This document shows, piece after piece, positions 29,166 through 46,707 of a DNA stretch of 64,000 nt. The notes below the pieces were generated by a model. The model was not told where the DNA came from. It searched no databases and was given only the letters and a program-made list of their open reading frames with translations. Origin of the DNA: Bigelowiella natans CCMP2755 (lineage: Eukaryota > Protista > Cercozoa); contig ADNK01000140.1 of NCBI GenBank assembly GCA_000320545.1, positions 248,001 through 312,000 on the forward strand. Reading direction: 5' to 3'. The position numbers and the translations under genes are program-made. The number at the start of each line of letters is the position of its first letter. Position 1 is the first letter of the stretch.

Positions 29166-31756
29166 TTAGGGCATTAGAAGTTTCTGCAAAGCCGTGTCTT
29201 CAACTAGGTCACTGAGAAGATCCTCGAGTTGGCTGGAAGCTCTTTGCGGGGGTTGTTGCTGTTGTGCACCGGTCGCTTGTGCACGCATGTCGGGCGCTCG
29301 TCCTGGGAAATGGTCATTGACGCGTTGGGTTGGAGGAAATCTGTTATGTCCAGTAGAGTGTGTACGCATGTTTGCTGGCCGTTGAAGAAATTTGTTATGG
29401 CGATTGTGGGGTGGTTTTGGTGGGGGGGCATACCGCATAGGTGGTTGTTGTCCATGTATATGTGGCGGTCGTCCACCATGAAAGTTGTGATGTGTACGCT
29501 GCGAGCCAGGAAACCTCCCACGAATCGGGGGTCGTTTTGGGGCCATGCTCGATGGAGTATTCGGTATGCGTCTGCTACCACGGAAATTTTGAGATGCGAG
29601 TTGCGAAGATGAGGGAGCAAACGGGGAATGCTGTTGTTGGGCTACACCTGGCGTGTTCGGTGGCCGCCGCCTCCTCACATTGTTGTTATTATTATGAGCA
29701 GCATTTTCAGGAAGGACGCTGCGCCCACTACCAAACCCATCAACTTTGGTATTTTCACCACCTACAATTTTGATCAGAATTTTTGACCGCTTTCTCTTCC
29801 TTCTTCCCCCCGCATCAATTTTCTGCGAGGATGAAAATCGATTACTGGGTGGTGGTGTTGCTGCTGTGATAGCTGTTTCAGAATGAAGGTTGGCAGTACT
29901 AGAGGAGGTTGCAGTGCCAGCAGTACTTAAGGTAGTAGTATCAGTAATACTAGCGTTGGTACCACCAATTCCACCTGCTGCTGATGAACTTAGGGGGTTA
30001 GTAGGATCAACCTTGCGTTGAAATAAAGGAGGAGGAGGAAGAGGAGGAGGGCCTGATGAATATCGCTTTGTGAATAACCCGTCGTCGCTTTCGTTATGGT
30101 TGGTAGCACTAGCACCTCTAACCCTCGAGGTAGCATCAGCACTGCTGCGTGCATATCGACTCGTGAGGTCGTCATCGCTACCATTGTCTTTGGCAGCAGC
30201 AGAGGTAACAGCTACTTCTGTATCACTACGACGCGCATATCGACTCGATAAGGCGTCATCATCGCTACCGTCGTCGTTGGCAGCCTTGGCATCAGTACCT
30301 CTTTTAGTACCAGAACTGCGGCGTGCATATCGGCTTGTTAGGTCGTCATCATCGCTACCATCGTCTTTGGAGGCAGCAGCTGCAGCACCAGCTCTAGAAG
30401 TAGCATCAACACTGCGGCGTGTATATCGGCTTGTTAGATCATCATCACTATCAGTTTTGTTGGAAGTAGTAGCAGTGGCAGTAGCACCACTGCGGCCTGC
30501 ATATCGATCCATAAGGGCACCATCGCTACCGTCGTTGTCATCATCATCATCACCACCATCGTCGTCTTTAGCAGCACTTTCTCCCACGCTGGCACTGCTG
30601 CCATTGGCAGCATACCGACTCGCGAGGGCGTCATCGCTGTCATCGTCGATTGTGCTAGCTTTTGCACCAGGATTACCTGTACTGCGGCTTGTATATCGGC
30701 TCGTGAAGACGTCATCGCTACTATCATCATTGGCAGCATTAGCATCAGGACCTTTTCTTTTAGTAGCAGCACCACTGCGTGCATATCGACTCGTGAGGTC
30801 GTCATCGCTACCATTGTCTTTGGCAGCAGCAGAGGTAACAGCTACTTCTGTATCACTACGACGCGCATATCGACTCGATAAGGCGTCATCATCGCTACCG
30901 TCGTCGTTGGCAGCCTTGGCATCAGTACCTCTTTTAGCACCAGAACTGCTGCGTGCATATCGGCTTGTTAGGTCGTCATCATCGCTACCATCGTCTTTGG
31001 AGGCAGCAGCTGCAGCACCAGCTCTAGAAGTAGCATCAACACTGCGGCGTGTATATCGGCTTGTTAGATCATCATCGCCTCCATTGTCGTTGGCAGCACC
31101 AGCTTCTGTACCACGACTAGCATTAGCACTGTGGCCTGAATATCGACTTGTGAGATCGTCATCGGTATCATTGTTGTTTGCGGCCGGTGCTCCTCCTCTA
31201 GTAGCATCAACTCTATTGTTGCGAGGACGCTTAAAGCTGCCATCCTCATCGTTTGCAGTTTTGCGGTCAGAATAGCGACGACTAATGACGGCGTCGTCGT
31301 CGATATCGCCACTGTTTGCATTGACAGCATGATCATCAACAGCAGCTCCTACCACATTGGCAGCAGCCCCAGTACTACTACTACTACCACCGGTACCACG
31401 ACGACTTGGGAGAAGATATCGGTTAAACAACTCATCATCGTCACTGCCGTCGCCGACGATATCCCCCCCCATAGTTCCTCCTTTCTTCCATCTCCTCGAC
31501 TGATTAGCTTGGTTGTCTTCGTAGTTGCTTCTTCCGTTGGTCATAGTCGTTTTCTGGGCGAGATTCCTTCCTCCTCCTCCTCCTCCTCCTCCTCCTCCTC
31601 CTCCTCCTCTAACGAGGTCCCACTGAGCATCAGAGTGGGGTCTGCTGCTGCGGTTGGTGGTGCTACCCCTTTGATGGGATTGGTTGAGACCAGGCAAGTT
31701 ATTATTTTGCTGGTGGTTTTGATGGCGGTAGGAGGAAGGAGGATGGGGAGGGTAGC

Positions 31757-31792
<36 letters not shown>

Positions 31793-32345
31793 ATTGATGA
31801 CGATGATTATCTTGCCGCAGGTGACGATCCTGACGGCGGTATTGTTCATTATTCCATTGGTCTTGGCCCTGCTTGTGATAATTCTGACGTTGTTGATGAT
31901 GCTGATATCGACGGTCTTGCTGCTGCTGGATTTCATGTGAAAATGGGCACGAGTCCCCGTACTTACAGATCCCATTTCTGAAGAAAACACACCTCACCGT
32001 CTGCTTGATGCTTGGTTCCACCGACAATGACGATGGCGCTGGCAACGACGACGACGAGGAGGAGGGGATGGGTATATCGCTGCTTCGCCTACGGATAAGC
32101 TCCCGCAGCTTTCTTCTCTTCATCCTCTTCTTCATCTTCTTACGTCTTTTTCTAGTGTCCCTATCTGCCTCCCAATCTGCCAGCCCCTTCTGCCAAGCAG
32201 CAGCAGAAGTAGAAGCCTCCTCAACTCCTTCCTTAGTCTTCATCACTAGCATATTGTCCTCTTGCATCATGATTTTCCGTCTCTATACAAATAAATATCA
32301 ATATAAATAATTATATATAATTATATATAATTATATAATTATATA

Positions 32346-39273: not shown

Positions 39274-39310
39274 ATTGAAAAGAGATAATCACTTCATCAC
39301 ATTCGTCTCA
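38930..39310 (-). repeat. Two to three copies of the dispersed repeat family, interrupted by (TA)n
   Basis: gctacattaggatg...aaaa..t.a....cattacatc.gtct occurs at ~38965 and ~39177, with a partial copy at ~39275; reverse complement of the 9428 copy. Confidence 0.6.
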
Positions 39311-39325
39311 TATATGCATGAATAC

Positions 39326-39363
<38 letters not shown>

Positions 39364-39496
39364 TATATACAAGACGATAGCTTAGCTGACCACTTCTGCA
39401 TATCATGGTTAGAAATGTGCATGCATAGCATGCAGAGTAGCGTGTGTAATTGATCATCTCTGACCCAACACTATTGTACATTGTACAATAATATTT

Positions 39497-40104
39497 TCAC
39501 TGTTCTGTCTTCCTCCCCACCCCCCCTCCCTTTTTGTTTGTCGATGATGATGATGCTGCACAAACCGCAGTATCATCACCATCACCATCATCACCTCTAT
39601 TATTGCACGTGGGATTAACGTCGCCGCCCTGAGCGGAAGTACTACTAACGTCGTTGGACGATTGCGACGAATCAAATGATAACTTGCTGGCCTTCGCTCT
39701 TTCTTCCTGCTGCTTTCTATTCTCGGTTGCTTTATTACTCGTCGGTCCAACGCCGCACACACCACTGACACCGTAGCCTGGGAGCAAACAACAAACATTC
39801 TGAGCTGAAAATATTACATCTCGATATCTCCACTGCCTGTTAACACCCATATGCACATTATTACATGAAAACTCTTGGGTATACTCCAGTATGCATTGTT
39901 TTGCCTCGGGGGTCAGCCTAGGGGCCATGCCTGTATCATCCAATTCGTGGAACTATCAGATACGATGCACCGCCTTCGATGAAAGGATGCACAACGAAAA
40001 CATCCTTCATTTTTCACAGCCATACGGCTGAGCATGCTAGTCAAACGTTGATATTTTCGTACAGAAATTGGAATTCTTTGAAACAGTCAGAAGATATCTT
40101 GTCC

Positions 40105-40146
<42 letters not shown>

Positions 40147-41176
40147 ATGATATTTATATTGAACTATACAATTTTAGATAAAATAAATGATTCTTCATTT
40201 TTACCACGAAGACTTTTAGTTCTTTCGAAATGACTCCTGAGCAATGTAGGTAAAGCACACACGCACACATGCTCAGGCATTGGTACTTCACCGCTTATAA
40301 TGTGATCAAGTAGTATTTGACCAGGTATCCCTCCTTCTTCTTGCTCCTTTTCTTCTTTATCATACATTTTTTCTACCTCAGCCCCTCTTCAAAGGTGAGA
40401 ATGTCTTGGCGATCTTTGCCATAGGAGCCATGAAGACCCAGTCCAATGTTCGTCAGCAAATGAACCTAAATCGAAACAAGTCAAAACACGTTACGTGTGT
40501 GTTTCTCTGTGTGCGTGCGTGCGCGCGCGTGTGTGTGTTAATGTGAAGAAACGTAGAGCCAGTGCCAGTGCGTAAGAACAAAAAGGGAGAGGTAAGGAAG
40601 GGGGGGAGAGAGAGGGGGGGGGGTTGGCACAGCTTGTTGGATATCGATTTTTGCAAGATTCTCCAAGCACAACCAGCGTAAAATTGCTCTCGCGCTTTCC
40701 CCCAGTTATCGTTTCCATCAACTCATCATGCCCCTAAAAATTAAAAACACATTCGATACTTACTCCTCAAAGCAGAGAAGGAAGGAGAAGGAGGCCACGG
40801 CTCAAAATAAGAATAGTCTTCATTATTTTGTACGAGGAGTACGACTACTAGGTCGCCTCCTAGTCCCAGCTATTTTGCATGCGGATAAACAATATTAGCA
40901 GTGTGTGTGTGTGTGTGTGTGTGTGTTGTGATTATCTACGCAATGAATGGTTGGCAAACCACACAACTAATTACACAACACATCATCAAACAACACCTTA
41001 TAGTGAAGCATCTTAGCGATGCAATCTTTGCCTTAGAATAACAGTATATATTTATGTCACCATAGAGTCAGTCATCAATAGGAGTCGTCAAGAGGGTGCG
41101 ACGACTCACGATCGACGTTTACTACAGCTTGGATGATATGACTGGGCACAATCTCACCAGCAGCTGTTGTGCTACA

Positions 41177-41209
<33 letters not shown>

Positions 41210-41575
41210 GTGTCATTATTATTTAACTGAGAACTCTACTACTTTTGAGAATGCTGCGGTAGCGAAGTTGGAAGTGCTCTGGCATTTCATCCATCGAATT
41301 TGATGTATATTCGTCCTTGCCTGCACCAACGGACGGAGGAGGAAAAGGGAAAAAAGGTCCCCACAAAGGGGGGGGGGAGGGGGGGCGAATTATCGACTAC
41401 ATTTTTGTTCCCAATTACTACGAAAAACAGCGTACGTTCTAAGGTACTGTGGAGGCTGTTTTTGTAAAAACAAATTTCATTCTATTTTGTGATGTATCAC
41501 TGAATATCCTGAGATCTATCGTGTAGCGTGGGCGGCTTGATTTAGGCAACGTCGAATCTCCTTGATAAGAAAGGC

Positions 41576-41608
<33 letters not shown>

Positions 41609-42692
41609 GTGATGATGACGAGCTTAAAATGTTATTGTATTTTGTTTGCTGCACTTTTGAATATTGCGTCTGCACTTTAAAAATTAATAGTCAATAGCCC
41701 TCCTCCTCCTCCTCCTCCTCCTCCTTCTCCTTACCGTGTGGCACGTAGTTATTGAAGAATAACGCTTGACTAACCACAAAATGAGCAAGAAAAGAATCGT
41801 CAAGGCAGCATTCATTAAGTGTATTCTCTCTTTCTCCTCCTCCTCCTCCTCCTCCTCCTCCTCCTCCTCCTCCTCCCCTTCCATCGTCTTCTATGTTTTT
41901 GTGTACACATCATCACCCCGACTGCAACTTCCAATACATGCCAGGAACGGGCCACGGTAATGAACAATATTTAACCTCGATGTATCTGAGAGGGGAGGAA
42001 GAAATATCGAAAACAAGGCCAGGAAGAAGATGAAGGAGGAGAGTAGGAAAATGATGAAAAGGGACTCCGTTATGAATGGAGAGTACTGTCTTCCGATAGC
42101 GTCGTATATGAGTGGGTTGATGATGTATTCATTCATGAAGATAGAGGCTTCAACTTATTTCTAGTCCGTACAGCTACAAATGAGAGTAGCATTTATGTAA
42201 AATGAGCTGATTGATCATCATCTTCATCATCTTCTCGTTGCTCCTCTTCTTATTCTAACGTGGTGAGGATGAGGAAGATACTAAGGAAACACCACCTTGC
42301 AAAGGAAAATTGAGCGGCACTGAGGAAGACACTTTCATCGACTAGAGCAGGATACAGCAGTATATACCGTGCAGCACGTAATGCCCTATCATCAGAGATT
42401 TGCATATAAATTTCACTCACACACACACGCACACACACACACACACAGACATCGCATATCGTGTATCCGACTTCTCTGTTTGTGTGTTGATGTGAAGAGC
42501 CCCTGAAAGACAAAAATATGACCCTCCTCCTCTTTGAAAATAAATCCACGGTGCTGTAGTCGATAATCATCCGTGCTGTCTTAATATGAACACTGCTACC
42601 TCAAGGTCCTCCTCCCATCTTTTTTCTTCTGCTGCCGGAAATAGTGATCCAGACGCTTATCCATGTATGCTTGCGAAGGAACCTGTTGAATA

Positions 42693-42737
<45 letters not shown>

Positions 42738-43434
42738 GTTGTGACCGCAGTGTATATGCATGTTTCTTATGCTGAGCGAATTGTTACGCATTTTGACTGA
42801 AAGGAGGAGATCGAGAAATAGGTGCAATCATCGGGCAACTCGTGAATGTGAACGACGAGAGGACAATCGACGATATCTAGGACGAGCTCAAGAACAACAA
42901 CAGTAGCGTCTCTCTCTATCTTTGCCCAGCAGCACCTCAGCGTCTGCATCTTCGTACACAATCAACGGCTGGTGATCATAAGTTACATCCTCCAACGCCG
43001 TGTGGAGACTCTGGTTGCAAATGATAGGAGGTGGGGGAAGGGTATTAAGAGGGGAGGGGAATGAGAAGAGGAAGAGAAGAAACAGATGATAATGATCGAA
43101 GGCAAATTCTGCTACGAATAAATCTGCAGTGTCATCACACGCGAGGAATTTTTCTTATCATCATCATCCACATTTTCCAACTTTAAGTTGGTATTGCAGC
43201 ATAATTTGGGAGGACTTACAACAATAACAACAACTACTACTACTCCTACTACTACTCCTACTACTACTCCTACTACCCTTTGCTGAGCGGCGAACATGCA
43301 GGTGGGAGAGGCCTCAGGTCTCGAATTACACACGGACTGTCACGAAAAAATTAATCATAATATTAGGTTTATTTCCATCTACCCCTGTATCTCGCCAGTG
43401 TGCGTCTTTCTCTCTCTCTTTCTCTTTCTCTCTC

Positions 43435-43480
<46 letters not shown>

Positions 43481-43481
43481 C

Positions 43482-43518
<37 letters not shown>

Positions 43519-44324
43519 TTTGAGTGTGCTTGTACGGCGATGTGTGCATCATACCCCAGAAAGACCAACAGCCCAAGATCGTGCATTGTGTACTCCTGTT
43601 TTATTAGAAATAAATGGGGGTAGAGTTCGTTTCGTATTTATCATCATGAGCAAGGTTTTGGATCCCCCCCCCCCCCCCGTGGTAAGTATAGAAGGATTGT
43701 CGTTGAATAATGACCGTATGAGCTCTCGTTGGCTGGAACGACGAAAGCATTTAACACTACCTGTAGTCGTCATTATGATGTATATGTATTCTTTATGATA
43801 TTATCCATATTTGGGCTCTGCCGACGACGATTTCATTCAAATCTAGCTTAACTCACGAGTATATCACAAACTTCAAATAACGTATATATATGTAATATTG
43901 TCTGTGAACTTCTGCAGGTTCCAAACCATAAATACTTCTGCAGGTTCCAAACCATAAATATATTATTGATGATAACGTACCCCCCCGAGTTCTGGCATCA
44001 GCTGTGTGATAATGCCAAGATTTTTTTGGTAAAATCTACATATAGCAGTATCATTGGAAAAAATTCTTCCAATTACATGTACGAAAAAGGGCAAGAACAA
44101 GAGGAGGAGGAGGAGGAGGAGGAGGAGGAAGAAAAAGGGAGATAATAGGGTTGTGTGTGGTTCTGACTCAAATCCTGATGGTGTGAAGAGTATAGCGTTG
44201 TTAAATTGAAGGGAAAGTGGATTGTAGTATGCACTTCCACCCGCTTCTGCAAGTACAGGTTCAAAAGCAAGATACCAGAAAAAATAGGTTCTAAAATCAG
44301 GCACACATACACACACACACGCAC

Positions 44325-44366
<42 letters not shown>

Positions 44367-44369
44367 GTA

Positions 44370-44415
<46 letters not shown>

Positions 44416-44657
44416 ATATGGAGGAAGATCATGCAAATTGGAGACTAATTTCCTCTTTCTTCTATTTTCATGTACTTTATCACCAGTCATGATTCTCATC
44501 TACCTATTGAAGACAGAAACTCATCTATCTCCCCTTCCAGTTTCTTCATCCAGTCGATCTCCCGTATTATTTGTAGTCTAAGCTTCTCCGGAAGTCTCAT
44601 CTGAACGACTCTACTCGGAAGAGGAGCGAATATAAAAAAGCATTGATAATATGAAGC

Positions 44658-44697
<40 letters not shown>

Positions 44698-45805
44698 ATC
44701 GTGTAGCATCTAGTGAGAAGTAGGATGACCTTGTCCCTCCATGGTTATCTAATTGGAATCTTAGATTCGAAACATCGTAGCCCTGTAATAGATACGACAA
44801 CCATTGGCCAGGAATAATAGTGGGGGGGGGGGGGGTGAGTCATGAAAATGGATAGCTATTGTACTATTTTGCAATGTCCTCTGCTTATATTATTCATTGT
44901 AACATGCACACCCATTGAATATCACTAAGTTTCGACTCATCACTCACATATTTTTCCTGAATTGCCCCGGCAAATTCAGCGACTCCGAAAAGCTTGGTGT
45001 TCTGATTCGATATGATCGACAAGAATATCAACTCTATCGCTTTGCTTACCTCAAATACAGAGATGGGGGAAATAAGCAAGAGCGCTATTCGATTCCTCAC
45101 CTTCAAAAAGCTTTTTTTTAAGTCCCTGTAAGCTCGAACAAAACGCGGTTCCAACTTATCTGCACATGACGCGGTTGGAACGTTAATTTCAGATCATCAT
45201 CCTTTTATTGTTGTGCGTGTAGTCTCAATGACGGTTACCGGCGTATGCTTTAGCTGCTGAGCACAAGTCTGTTCGTGAGCGCTGTCCATTGATCGGGAGA
45301 AAAGTAGCTGCTCCAGCGATATCATCGCCATTCCAAGTTTTGGTCGTCGATCTGGAGAATAACATTTGAAATATAGTGATATTAGTGTCATGACTCAAAT
45401 CCTCCTCCTCCTCATCATCATCATTATCATCACTGCTTTGAATGTGTAATTATCTCAGGAATCAAGCGACCGCCACATAGATACCGCTACAACATCCATT
45501 ACTTCAGATGCTGCTGATACTACAGCTACAATCCACAACCACTTTTCATGAGTAACAAGAAAAATTAACAGAACAATGATAAATAAAAACATTAAAATTA
45601 CATTGAAATTTTATAATAACTATTGCTCCGCTTCTGCGGCTGATATCTTACCCTGCGCCACAGCGAGCAAGACTAAAAAGAAAGAATGCTACGACTCCAT
45701 GAGCCAGTCTGTAATAACTTTGCGATCAATTCAACAAATAAGCCTATGAAGTATGTTACATCCGAAAGGGGTATATGAACTATGGTCTCACCTGCTCGTT
45801 ATCAT
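39497..45805 (-). CDS. Signal-peptide Fe(II)/2-oxoglutarate-dependent enzyme (PhyH/SyrB2-like fold) with an H-x-A motif; candidate halogenase; more than 20 small exons
   Basis: Phase-consistent splicing gives MITSRLAHGVVAFFLFSLARCGAG...LMPELGG|VVLNAFVVPANESSY|GVHNARSWAVGLSG|...|SLHTALEDVTYDHQPLIVYE...WKLQSG|QALFFNNYVPH|GDSTLPKSSRPRYTIDLRIF. Order and spacing fit the DSBH core. HNA is at 43590-43582, the distal His at 41738-41736 and the 2OG-binding Arg at ~41527. Confidence 0.7.
43908..43959. repeat. Perfect 26-bp tandem duplication in an intron
   Basis: acttctgcaggttccaaaccataaat x2. Confidence 0.9.
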
Positions 45806-46707
45806 GTGGCTTCCCTTCCGCTGCAGCAGGGCACCACAACAGTGGGCGCTGCTCTCACCGCTGTGTGTTCGTTCGAGCTCGGAAATAATGATCGTTGCTC
45901 GTGATAAAGGAAGATCGCAGAAGGCATAATTACCGAGGATTTAGTTCGTGCGACAACGAGAAATCTGACATGATAAAAACTTTCACAGAAGAGAGATAAT
46001 GTGGTTTTCAGGAGAATGTTGTCTCTGTTGTAGTCGTAGTTTGTACGAATTTCGGAATTCGTACGAGCGTTAAGATAATCAGAAAGAATGTTAGTCTGTC
46101 GCACACTAAGACTATGAAAATCACTTCGGTGAAAAAACATAGGGGAAGTCAAGGACGCGAACAGAATACATGTAACTAACAAGATACGAAGAACAAATTC
46201 GGGTTATTTCCCATTGCAAAACTCCGAGAGAAGAAAATACTGCTGAATTTTGCCTCCGACTGTCAAGAAAAACCGTTATCATGTAGCAGATCTACTTAAT
46301 ACGACTTAATACAGTTAATTGTCGTTTATGATTAGATAGCATATTTATGCTGTACGCGGTTCGAAGGTCAGGCTCGTAGCATTCGAAAGGACATTGGGAC
46401 TTTACGACTTGTAGATATGATCGGTATCTGGGTAAAAATGCAAGGATGAGCTTTACATGCTCGAAGCTGCTGAGATTCTATTTCGGGATAGTATGTTTAG
46501 CGACATGCTCAAAGTCGGTTTGAAAGTAGAAAATGATTTGGGTATTTGCCGGTGATCGGGTTTCTTGATGGTGGATTTAAATCTGAAAAAGTTGATCTTC
46601 TTATTCACAAACCCTAAGCTTACCAAAGGGAGGAGTGGAGTTCTAACACACCCCTCTGAGGCCAACGACTCCAACGCCACCGTTGGACTCAAGCTGGTGC
46701 ACCCACA

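What the first reader, a model, noticed from the sequence alone, without database searches (positions are those of the whole stretch)
39497..45805. Candidate secretory-pathway Fe(II)/2OG radical halogenase hidden in more than 20 small exons
Seen in sequence: phase-consistent exons give a signal peptide and a DSBH core NAFVVPANESSYGV-H-N-A...SLHTALEDV...PLIVY...GQALFFNNYVP-H-G...RYTIDLR. Established: Fe(II)/2OG hydroxylases bind iron with H-x-D/E...H, while halogenases (SyrB2, CytC3, WelO5, BesD) replace the carboxylate with Ala or Gly to open a halide site. The spacing here parallels SyrB2 as I recall it (FFPK...WHQA...VWTAF.D...GQFIIF...H...R). Inference: a stand-alone eukaryotic algal halogenase acting in the ER or extracellular space, with no NRPS carrier protein nearby. 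That would be an unusual route to marine organohalogens. A catalytically dead pseudoenzyme is the alternative.
Basis: partly seen in the sequence, partly recalled or inferred. Interest (0 to 1): 0.88.

Follow-up and report, generated by a model that had tools for sequence, protein, structure and literature searches.

The report
Algal candidate iron halogenase gene
A transcribed 25-exon gene of the alga Bigelowiella natans encodes a signal-peptide-bearing member of an undescribed enzyme family that has the fold and two-histidine-plus-alanine iron site typical of radical halogenases; whether it adds halogens is untested.

Summary
On the minus strand, 45805-39497, lies one gene of 25 GT..AG-bounded exons (596 codons). 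Spliced transcript contigs from three studies support it, including the 43336/43555 joint. Exon-by-exon homology to an Amorphochlora orthologue also supports it.

The genome is Bigelowiella natans. The JGI model 67156 (P0001) is mis-spliced and skips the exon holding the Arg motif.

The protein matches no Pfam, NCBIfam or PDB sequence. AlphaFold models of the orthologue hit only PhyH-type Fe/2OG oxygenases, SyrB2 and CurA Hal among them (Foldseek E down to 6e-6, VIA Z about 10).

All 16 relatives found carry H-x-Ala/Gly (never Asp/Glu), a second His in an H-[GA]-D motif (H-G-D in all but the Streptomyces copy, H-A-D), and an Arg 12 residues later. They come from chlorarachniophytes, low-GC bacteria and a Streptomyces plasmid.

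The bacterial copies sit directly beside NRPS or PKS megasynthases, the usual setting of SyrB2-type halogenases. The algal copies have signal peptides instead, and no carrier gene lies nearby.

Verdict: a real, new PhyH-fold family and a credible candidate radical halogenase. Halogenation, iron-site geometry and localisation remain unproven. An invariant Asp two residues after the second His is an open caveat.

The parts
39497..45805 (-). Whole coding span of the gene, from ATG (45805-45803) to the stop (39499-39497): 25 exons, 596 codons
45792..45805 (-). Exon 1, coding part. The 5' UTR reaches to about 45880 in the X1 contig. It holds the start of the signal peptide
45652..45708 (-). Exon 2: hydrophobic core of the signal peptide (residues about 9-20, likely cleavage after residue 24)
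45239..45351 (-). Exon 3
   Evidence: joints 45159/45239 and 45351/45652
45101..45159 (-). Exon 4
44948..45001 (-). Exon 5
44730..44782 (-). Exon 6
44504..44610 (-). Exon 7: the 35-residue query that retrieved P0001
44168..44246 (-). Exon 8: family motif SLQFNNAILF
43981..44035 (-). Exon 9, placed by the 55-base remainder of the X7 contig plus homology
43715..43760 (-). Exon 10: beta strand VVLNAFVVPANESSYG that leads to the first His
43555..43595 (-). Exon 11: VHNARSWAVGLSG. His215 codon 43590-43588; Ala217 codon 43584-43582
   Evidence: joint 43336/43555
43277..43336 (-). Exon 12
42936..43010 (-). Exon 13: SLHTALEDV... motif. His249 stands where the bacterial relatives, and the PhyH-type 'W-x-x-L-x-D' strand, have Trp
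42600..42682 (-). Exon 14
42296..42385 (-). Exon 15
41917..41985 (-). Exon 16
41735..41769 (-). Exon 17: GQALFFNNYVPHG. His363 codon 41738-41736
41501..41560 (-). Exon 18: Asp365 (41558-41556), Arg375 (41528-41526), Arg381. The JGI model P0001 skips this exon
41243..41320 (-). Exon 19
40997..41031 (-). Exon 20
40674..40733 (-). Exon 21
40377..40465 (-). Exon 22: conserved C-terminal region of the family
40205..40236 (-). Exon 23
39865..39930 (-). Exon 24
   Evidence: joint 39929/40204 and loose end at 39864
39497..39777 (-). Exon 25, coding part with the stop codon: a low-complexity Ser/Asp/Gly-rich tail of about 90 residues found only in this species
   Evidence: loose-end consensus matches 39776 onward

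Best explanation
The locus is a single-copy, expressed nuclear gene of Bigelowiella natans. It encodes a 596-residue protein made of four parts:
- an N-terminal signal peptide;
- a PhyH-like double-stranded beta-helix catalytic domain;
- a conserved, mostly helical C-terminal region, part of which aligns with the C-terminal parts of the PhyH-type structures;
- a species-specific low-complexity tail.

It belongs to a small family with no Pfam, NCBIfam or PDB sequence match. In this family the metal site is built from two invariant histidines (His215, His363), with Ala or Gly where Fe(II)/2-oxoglutarate hydroxylases have the Asp/Glu ligand. An Arg (Arg375) sits where PhyH enzymes bind the distal carboxylate of 2-oxoglutarate.

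Inferred mechanism. Fe(II) is held by the two His. 2-oxoglutarate chelates the iron, and O2 gives an Fe(IV)-oxo that abstracts a hydrogen atom. The coordination site left open by Ala217 carries an anion, most likely chloride or bromide, which rebounds onto the substrate radical. That would make it a radical halogenase.

In bacteria the family works beside NRPS or PKS carrier proteins. The algal copies appear to have entered the secretory pathway and to act without a linked carrier.

Shown here: gene structure, expression, fold class, motif conservation and genomic contexts. Inferred: metal and cosubstrate binding, halide transfer, localisation and substrate.
For: Gene and expression:
- Spliced contigs in three studies, and raw RNA reads whose first mates lie mostly on the + strand.
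- One open frame through 25 GT..AG exons.
- A single locus in the genome.

Identity: P0001 is Bigelowiella natans JGI model 67156.

Fold:
- The AF2 model of orthologue P0002:100-508 has pLDDT 70 and pTM 0.75.
- The Foldseek top hits are all PhyH-type Fe/2OG enzymes: TlxI 6e-6, SptF, proline hydroxylase H11, SyrB2 2fct 7e-4, CurA Hal 1e-3.
- VIA gives Z 9-10.4 over 180-220 residues.
- Language-model neighbours are PhyH clusters at 0.93.
- hhalign against a profile of B. natans PhyH paralogues aligns GQALFFNN..H..R with GD..H..N..R, matching His to His and Arg to Arg (pairwise E 5e-4, probability about 30%).

Motif:
- H-x-A in 14 relatives and H-x-G in 2, with Asp/Glu in none.
- In the 14-sequence alignment the only invariant His residues are those matching His215 and His363, plus one in the C-terminal region.
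- In the model, the first His ends a strand, the second His ends a strand, and the Arg opens the next strand.

Context of bacterial relatives:
- They lie directly upstream of an NRPS with hydrolase, adenylation domain with embedded methyltransferase, carrier domain and thioesterase.
- In a Streptomyces plasmid the relative overlaps the end of a PKS gene.

Field criterion: Kipouros and Chang 2026 (PMC13489965) state that all previously reported radical halogenases have the 2His-1Gly/Ala motif. They use it as the marker for radical halogenases.
Against: - No activity data exist.
- The structure models are of the Amorphochlora orthologue (46-50% identical), not of this protein.
- Confidence is low exactly around the first His (pLDDT about 48-62).
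- Model coordinates could not be inspected, so a carboxylate reaching the iron from elsewhere is not excluded.
- An Asp two residues after the second His (Asp365) is invariant. In PhyH enzymes that position is usually Ser or Gly and faces the 2OG distal carboxylate (from my recollection of the human PHYH structure). An Asp there may alter cosubstrate binding.
- hhalign did not align the H-x-A motif to H-x-D with confidence.
- Halogenases are not the closest structural matches.
- A two-His site does not guarantee halogenation: aspartyl beta-hydroxylase is a two-His hydroxylase (my own knowledge).
- No halogenated metabolite of Bigelowiella turned up in the literature search.
Confidence: 0.5

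Rival explanations
1. It is an active PhyH-fold Fe/2OG-type oxygenase whose two-His site performs hydroxylation, desaturation, cyclisation or another non-halogenating reaction. The site vacated by Ala would be filled by water, by a substrate group, or by a relocated carboxylate such as the invariant Asp365.
For: - The fold and the His/His/Arg pattern are shared with many non-halogenating PhyH-type enzymes, which are the best structural matches.
- The Asp in the second-His motif (H-G-D; H-A-D in Streptomyces) is invariant across the family.
- Two-His hydroxylases exist, for example AspH (my own knowledge).
Against: - Ala or Gly at the ligand position is kept in all 16 relatives, at 26-31% identity across bacteria and algae.
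- Kipouros and Chang (PMC13489965) state that all previously reported radical halogenases carry this pattern.
- The megasynthase-adjacent context matches SyrB2- and CurA-Hal-type halogenases.
Confidence: 0.28
2. It is a catalytically inactive PhyH-fold protein (pseudoenzyme) that serves as a binding or scaffolding protein in the secretory pathway.
For: - The carboxylate ligand is missing.
- There is no Pfam match.
- A PhyH-fold non-enzyme, the trypanosome RESC subunit 8fni_14, is among the structural matches.
Against: - Both His, the Arg and the surrounding motifs are invariant from Streptomyces to algae, which drift in a dead site would not preserve.
- Bacterial copies are translationally linked to biosynthetic megasynthases.
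Confidence: 0.08
3. The family's role is tied to mercury or metal handling rather than natural-product tailoring. The two His and the conserved Cys residues would bind a metal or a metal-thiol compound, as suggested by the mer-operon setting of the low-GC bacterial copies.
For: - In L012, L014 and L015 the gene lies with MerR, a bona fide MerA, MerT, an HMA protein and a MerB-MerA fusion, on mobile DNA.
- MerA there carries a C-terminal extension whose last roughly 30 residues resemble the tail of the family protein.
Against: - The Streptomyces copy has no mer genes and follows a PKS.
- The algal gene has no such neighbours.
- The NRPS neighbour is the constant partner in the low-GC copies.
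- The mer linkage may simply reflect one mobile element seen several times, since the copies are 60-92% identical.
Confidence: 0.06

Closest known systems
Carrier-protein-dependent Fe(II)/2OG radical halogenases of the PhyH-like group (SyrB2, CytC3, CmaB, CurA Hal, HctB)
   Same: - PhyH-type double-stranded beta-helix fold. 2fct and 3nnj/3nnf are among the Foldseek matches.
- H-x-Ala/Gly in place of H-x-Asp/Glu, a distal His, and an Arg 12 residues after it.
- Bacterial relatives lie next to NRPS or PKS carrier-containing genes.
   Different: - No detectable sequence similarity to them or to Pfam PhyH.
- About 130 additional conserved residues at the C-terminus.
- An invariant Asp two residues after the distal His.
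- The algal members carry a signal peptide and have no linked carrier gene.
- Halogenases are not the nearest structures.
PhyH-family hydroxylases and related oxygenases (PHYHD1, GriE, proline hydroxylase H11, TlxI, SptF, FtmOx1, EvdO1, ThoJ, SnoN)
   Same: - Best structural matches: Foldseek E down to 6e-6, VIA Z 9-10.4 over 180-220 residues.
- Shared G-x-x-x-F...H...R motif, and a 'W/H-x-x-L' strand after the first His.
   Different: - As far as I recall, those enzymes have the H-x-D/E carboxylate ligand. This family never does.
- The Pfam PF05721 model does not detect this family.
Free-standing radical halogenases (WelO5, BesD, AdeV, plant DAH, and the AspX and BtnX of PMC13489965)
   Same: The algal protein, if active, would likewise act without a linked carrier protein. 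It would be another eukaryotic case alongside DAH.
   Different: - These were not compared here by sequence or structure. From general knowledge they arose in other 2OG-oxygenase subfamilies.

Membership tests
Fe(II)/2OG radical halogenase (2His-1Ala/Gly type) | Double-stranded beta-helix (cupin) fold of the 2OG-oxygenase type | tested here: met
   AF2 models of orthologue P0002. Foldseek and VIA matches are all PhyH-type Fe/2OG enzymes. Tested on the orthologue, not on the window's own protein.
Fe(II)/2OG radical halogenase (2His-1Ala/Gly type) | Proximal His followed at +2 by Ala or Gly instead of Asp/Glu | tested here: met
   H-N-A at residues 215-217 (codons 43590-43582). Ala in 14 and Gly in 2 of 16 relatives, never Asp/Glu. 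This is the only invariant His in the N-terminal half of the barrel. Its structural equivalence to the H-x-D position rests on strand position. hhalign did not confirm it.
Fe(II)/2OG radical halogenase (2His-1Ala/Gly type) | Distal His on the seventh barrel strand, and an Arg 10-13 residues later for the 2OG distal carboxylate | tested here: met
   His363 and Arg375. hhalign pairs them with the His and Arg of B. natans PhyH paralogues. They are invariant in the family.
Fe(II)/2OG radical halogenase (2His-1Ala/Gly type) | No other carboxylate within coordinating distance of the iron | not testable with these tools
The invariant Asp365 (H-G-D) and conserved Glu residues are unplaced.
Fe(II)/2OG radical halogenase (2His-1Ala/Gly type) | Halide- and 2OG-dependent C-H halogenation | not testable with these tools
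   Needs biochemistry.
SyrB2-type carrier-dependent halogenases | Substrate presented on an adjacent NRPS or PKS carrier protein | tested here: inconclusive
   Bacterial relatives lie next to an NRPS with adenylation (methyltransferase-embedded), carrier and thioesterase domains, or next to a PKS. In the alga, none of the eight long ORFs scanned in the window gave a megasynthase domain, and no PP-binding match lies on contig C3597, although megasynthases exist elsewhere in the genome.
Pfam PF05721 (PhyH) | Score over the family's gathering threshold | tested here: not met
   No PF05721 match at E up to 10 for P0001-P0005 or single exons; the only row was a sub-threshold Cupin_2 hit for P0004. 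The six-frame PF05721 scan of the genome hits 37 other places but not this gene. The relation is at fold level only.

The most novel reading that the evidence does not exclude
Chlorarachniophyte algae took a megasynthase-associated radical halogenase from bacteria, added a signal peptide and about 24 introns, and now use it as a free-standing halogenase in the ER lumen or outside the cell. It would act on a substrate that is not carrier-bound. That would be the first radical Fe/2OG halogenase of an alga and the first in a secretory pathway, from a family that no Pfam or NCBIfam model recognises.
Probability: 0.3. Interest if true: 0.8.

Novelty: new variant of a known kind. Interest (0 to 1): 0.62.

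Why it matters
Radical Fe/2OG halogenases are rare and are sought after as C-H functionalisation catalysts. Almost all known ones are bacterial, and the plant enzyme DAH is described as a rare eukaryotic case (PMC13489965).

This family has no Pfam, NCBIfam or PDB sequence match. That paper's atlas was mined from proteins with an InterPro cupin annotation, so the family may be missing from it. This could not be checked.

If active, the algal enzyme would give a genetic handle on organohalogen formation by a marine phytoplankter. It would also be an example of a halogenase working in the secretory pathway without a carrier protein.

The bacterial relatives next to one-module NRPS genes offer a tractable route to the substrate. 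The work also corrects the public gene model of this locus.

Tried and rejected
Searches that found nothing:
- Pfam on ten single exons, on P0001, and on P0002-P0005 except a sub-threshold Cupin_2 hit.
- NCBIfam.
- PDB sequence searches with the protein and with two profiles: only chance antibody hits or nothing.
- A PF05721 six-frame scan of the genome: 37 places, none in this gene.
- Paralogue searches in the genome: self only.
- Viral contigs and the GTDB species genomes: no relatives.
- A second word-indexed profile search: no new proteins.

Partial results:
- hhalign against PhyH paralogue profiles aligned only the C-terminal motif with meaning. The extended alignment did not place H-x-A on H-x-D.
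- DNA for the P0005 contig was not retrievable.
- Supplementary data of PMC13489965 are not held, so I could not check whether this family is in their halogenase atlas.
- Literature searches linking Bigelowiella to halogenation, or mer operons to NRPS, found nothing relevant.

Readings rejected:
- The alternative frame EYTMHDLG is contradicted by the homologues.
- Plastid targeting is unlikely. Only about 10-25 non-conserved residues follow the signal peptide before the conserved domain starts, they carry no net positive charge, and that leaves no room for a transit-peptide-like segment (inference).

Left out on instruction: the joined 596-residue spliced model was assembled only inside a script, to check frame continuity. 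It was not sent to any search, fold or family tool. Exons were searched singly by reference, and database proteins P0001 and P0002 served as proxies.

Full report
**Observation**

The region 39300-46000 was read on the minus strand. It has the look of a eukaryotic, microsatellite-rich locus. The window is contig C3597:248001-312000 of a 91.4-Mb assembly in 3736 contigs.

A sequencing-run search found about 20 runs of one organism, each holding roughly a fifth of the sampled words. That is the share expected for exons only.

I laid three such runs from three studies, plus one raw RNA-seq run, on 39860-45850.
- Fifteen joints were listed, all CT..AC on the + strand, which is GT..AG for a minus-strand gene. 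They include 43336->43555.
- One 1755-base contig (X7) crosses almost the whole message.
- The few raw reads (18) have their first mates mostly on the + strand. That fits a minus-strand RNA in a standard stranded library.

After resolving the ambiguous cut positions, all 24 introns are GT..AG. The 25 exons then keep one open frame of 596 codons from ATG 45805 to stop 39497-39499.

Two joints were not among those listed: 43595/43715 and 43760/43981. They follow from three things:
- contig arithmetic (202 bases = 60+41+46+55);
- the independent JGI model;
- tblastn of the Amorphochlora orthologue against the window, which hits exon 10 (P0002 residues 190-208), exon 11 (205-221, 65% identity) and exon 18 (350-371, 77% identity) in order.

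**Identity of the gene**

Exon 7 (35 residues) was searched against 1.84 billion representative proteins. It returned one protein, P0001. P0001 is EukProt EP00466 Bigelowiella natans, JGI Bigna1 model 67156.

That ab initio model differs from the transcript-supported structure:
- it carries three insertions not seen in the transcripts;
- it has a different 3' end;
- it skips exon 18 (41560-41501), which holds the Asp and Arg motif that every relative has.

The gene is single-copy in the genome.

**The family**

Word-indexed searches, a metagenome scan and a plasmid search gave 16 members in all:
- P0001, the window's own gene;
- P0002, from Amorphochlora amoebiformis;
- P0003 and P0004, from run assemblies;
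- L013, an intron-containing genomic contig at 47% identity;
- P0005, a distant member at 26% identity;
- L011, two tandem copies in L012, and P0006-P0011, all of a low-GC bacterial type at about 30% identity;
- a Streptomyces plasmid protein at about 29-31% identity.

A shape search of the ESM Atlas adds two unnamed bacterial clusters at TM 0.65 over about 335 residues: 78 members in Pseudomonadota and 52 in Actinomycetota.

None of these proteins matches a Pfam or NCBIfam model above threshold. Neither the proteins nor the profiles built from them match any PDB sequence.

**Fold**

Two AlphaFold models were made of the Amorphochlora orthologue.
- Full length: pLDDT 58, pTM 0.62.
- Residues 100-508 with 13 sequences: pLDDT 70, pTM 0.75.

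Both models match only PhyH-type Fe/2OG oxygenases.
- Foldseek: TlxI 6e-6, SptF, proline hydroxylase H11, SyrB2 (2fct) 7e-4, CurA Hal 1e-3, AndA, AsqJ, FtmOx1.
- VIA-align: Z 9-10.4 over 180-220 residues for EvdO1, ThoJ, TlxI, SnoN, GriE, PHYHD1, MysH and others.

Language-model neighbours are PhyH clusters.

A profile of ten PhyH paralogues taken from the same genome aligns with the family's GQALFFNN..H-G-D...R block. His pairs with His and Arg with Arg (pairwise E about 5e-4, probability about 30%).

The fold assignment is therefore solid at the level of 'PhyH-like barrel'. It does not make the protein a member of Pfam PhyH.

**Active-site reading**

In the 14-sequence alignment the invariant His residues correspond to His215, His363 and one in the C-terminal region.

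The residue two after the first His is Ala in 14 sequences and Gly in 2. It is never Asp or Glu. One bacterial contig carries tandem copies with Ala and with Gly.

In the better model the first His ends a short strand that follows the long VVLNAF-type strand. The second His ends another strand, and the Arg opens the next one. That is the canonical layout as I know it for this fold.

A Trp (bacteria) or His (algae) lies 27-34 residues after the first His, in a 'W-x-x-L-T/E' strand that resembles the PhyH 'W-x-A-L-D-D' strand.

Kipouros and Chang (PMC13489965) state that all previously reported radical halogenases have the 2His-1Gly/Ala motif. They used exactly this feature, plus the absence of a nearby carboxylate, to mine AlphaFold models. 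Their set started from InterPro cupin annotations, which this family may lack. I could not check their atlas.

**Caveats on the active site**

- Confidence of the model is lowest around the first His.
- Coordinates could not be inspected.
- hhalign did not place H-x-A on H-x-D.
- An Asp two residues after the second His is invariant, giving H-G-D (H-A-D in Streptomyces). From my recollection of the human PHYH structure, this position is a Ser that touches the distal carboxylate of 2OG rather than the iron. An Asp there is more likely to reshape the cosubstrate pocket than to bind the metal. This is inference only, and it is the main open point.

**Context**

In the alga, none of the eight long ORFs scanned in the window gave a megasynthase domain; the only match was a CCCH zinc-finger protein. 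No phosphopantetheine-binding match lies on this contig, although large carrier-containing ORFs exist on other contigs.

In the low-GC bacterial loci the gene is followed at once by a 2500-2600-residue NRPS. Its domains are an alpha/beta hydrolase, an amino-acid adenylation domain with an embedded methyltransferase, a carrier domain and a thioesterase.

In L012 and L015 the gene is preceded by MerR and a true mercury(II) reductase that carries an extra C-terminal domain. In L014 the mer genes (MerT, an HMA protein, MerA, a MerB-MerA fusion) lie just upstream, mostly on the other strand. The loci sit on mobile DNA: a Tn3-type transposase and resolvases in L015, a phage-type integrase in L014.

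In the Streptomyces plasmid the gene overlaps the stop of a giant polyketide synthase and is followed by two hydrolases.

Two unrelated megasynthase contexts argue for a tailoring enzyme that acts on carrier-bound intermediates in bacteria, as SyrB2 and CurA Hal do. The mer linkage is unexplained. It may reflect one mobile element sampled repeatedly.

**Targeting**

The corrected protein and its algal relatives begin with a short charged segment and an 11-12-residue hydrophobic core (Kyte-Doolittle about 2.4-2.8), followed by small residues. Two of the three bacterial N-termini examined lack this feature, while P0010 has a moderately hydrophobic N-terminal segment (about 1.9).

The conserved domain starts only 10-25 residues after the predicted cleavage site, and the intervening residues are not basic. 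A chlorarachniophyte plastid transit-like segment therefore seems unlikely. Entry into the ER is the best inference. No dedicated predictor was available. There is no KDEL-type ending.

**Verdict**

The gene, its splicing and the motifs are real. The protein founds, or joins, an unannotated PhyH-fold family. Its conserved two-His/Ala-or-Gly/Arg pattern and bacterial neighbourhoods make a radical halogenase the single most likely function (about 0.5). A non-halogenating two-His oxygenase is the main rival (about 0.28). A pseudoenzyme (0.08) and a metal-handling role (0.06) are minor ones.

It is best classed as a new variant of a known kind of enzyme.

Noticed in passing
window 39497-45805 compared with P0001: The public JGI gene model 67156 for this locus is mis-spliced. 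It skips exon 18 (41560-41501), carries three insertions that the transcripts lack, and ends at a different 3' exon. It is 521 residues against the transcript-supported 596.
   Followed up: yes
L012:946-6635; L015:7056-19579; L014:3827-19158: In low-GC bacterial contigs the family gene sits within or next to mer genes and directly upstream of a one-module NRPS. In L012 and L015 the order is MerR, MerA, family gene, NRPS; in L014 MerT, an HMA protein, MerA and a MerB-MerA fusion lie just upstream. L015 carries a Tn3-type transposase and resolvases, L014 a phage-type integrase. MerA there has a roughly 330-residue C-terminal extension.
   Followed up: partly
L012:2299-3342 and L012:3362-4930: The MerA extension and the upstream family paralogue end in nearly the same acidic tail of about 20-30 residues (...FGSNE-x-NEEHQEL). 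It could be a shared docking or sorting tag. It is unexplained.
   Followed up: no
L012:3362-4930 and L012:4956-6632: Tandem paralogues of the family sit on one bacterial contig, one with H-N-G and one with H-N-A at the ligand position.
   Followed up: partly
L024:11782-13125 (Streptomyces sp. Caat 7-52 plasmid NZ_CP098484.1): A family member annotated as a hypothetical protein (H-A-A motif) overlaps the end of a giant polyketide synthase gene. Two alpha/beta hydrolase genes follow it.
   Followed up: partly
window 43060-43459: Contig word-depth spikes to the hundreds or thousands, with many loose ends that have different flanks. This is the GTA/GGA-type microsatellite in the intron between exons 12 and 13, shared with unrelated transcripts. 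It is not expression of this gene.
   Followed up: partly
G000, 37 places, e.g. L005, L007, L008, L016-L023: Bigelowiella natans carries a large set of canonical PhyH-type genes with H-x-D. Several lie inside very long open frames, one of them a 754-residue frame in L008.
   Followed up: partly
window 29169-32270, minus strand: A 1034-codon open frame with a CCCH zinc finger lies about 7 kb downstream of the gene's 3' end.
   Followed up: no
P0005 (ENA ERZ24794637, 3681-base contig): The most divergent member (H-H-A motif, Cys-rich N-terminal extension) is encoded without introns between two same-strand genes on a short contig of unknown organism. The DNA was not retrievable.
   Followed up: partly
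window 45694: Nine raw RNA reads of run X21 end at the same place inside exon 2. They may be copies of one molecule.
   Followed up: no
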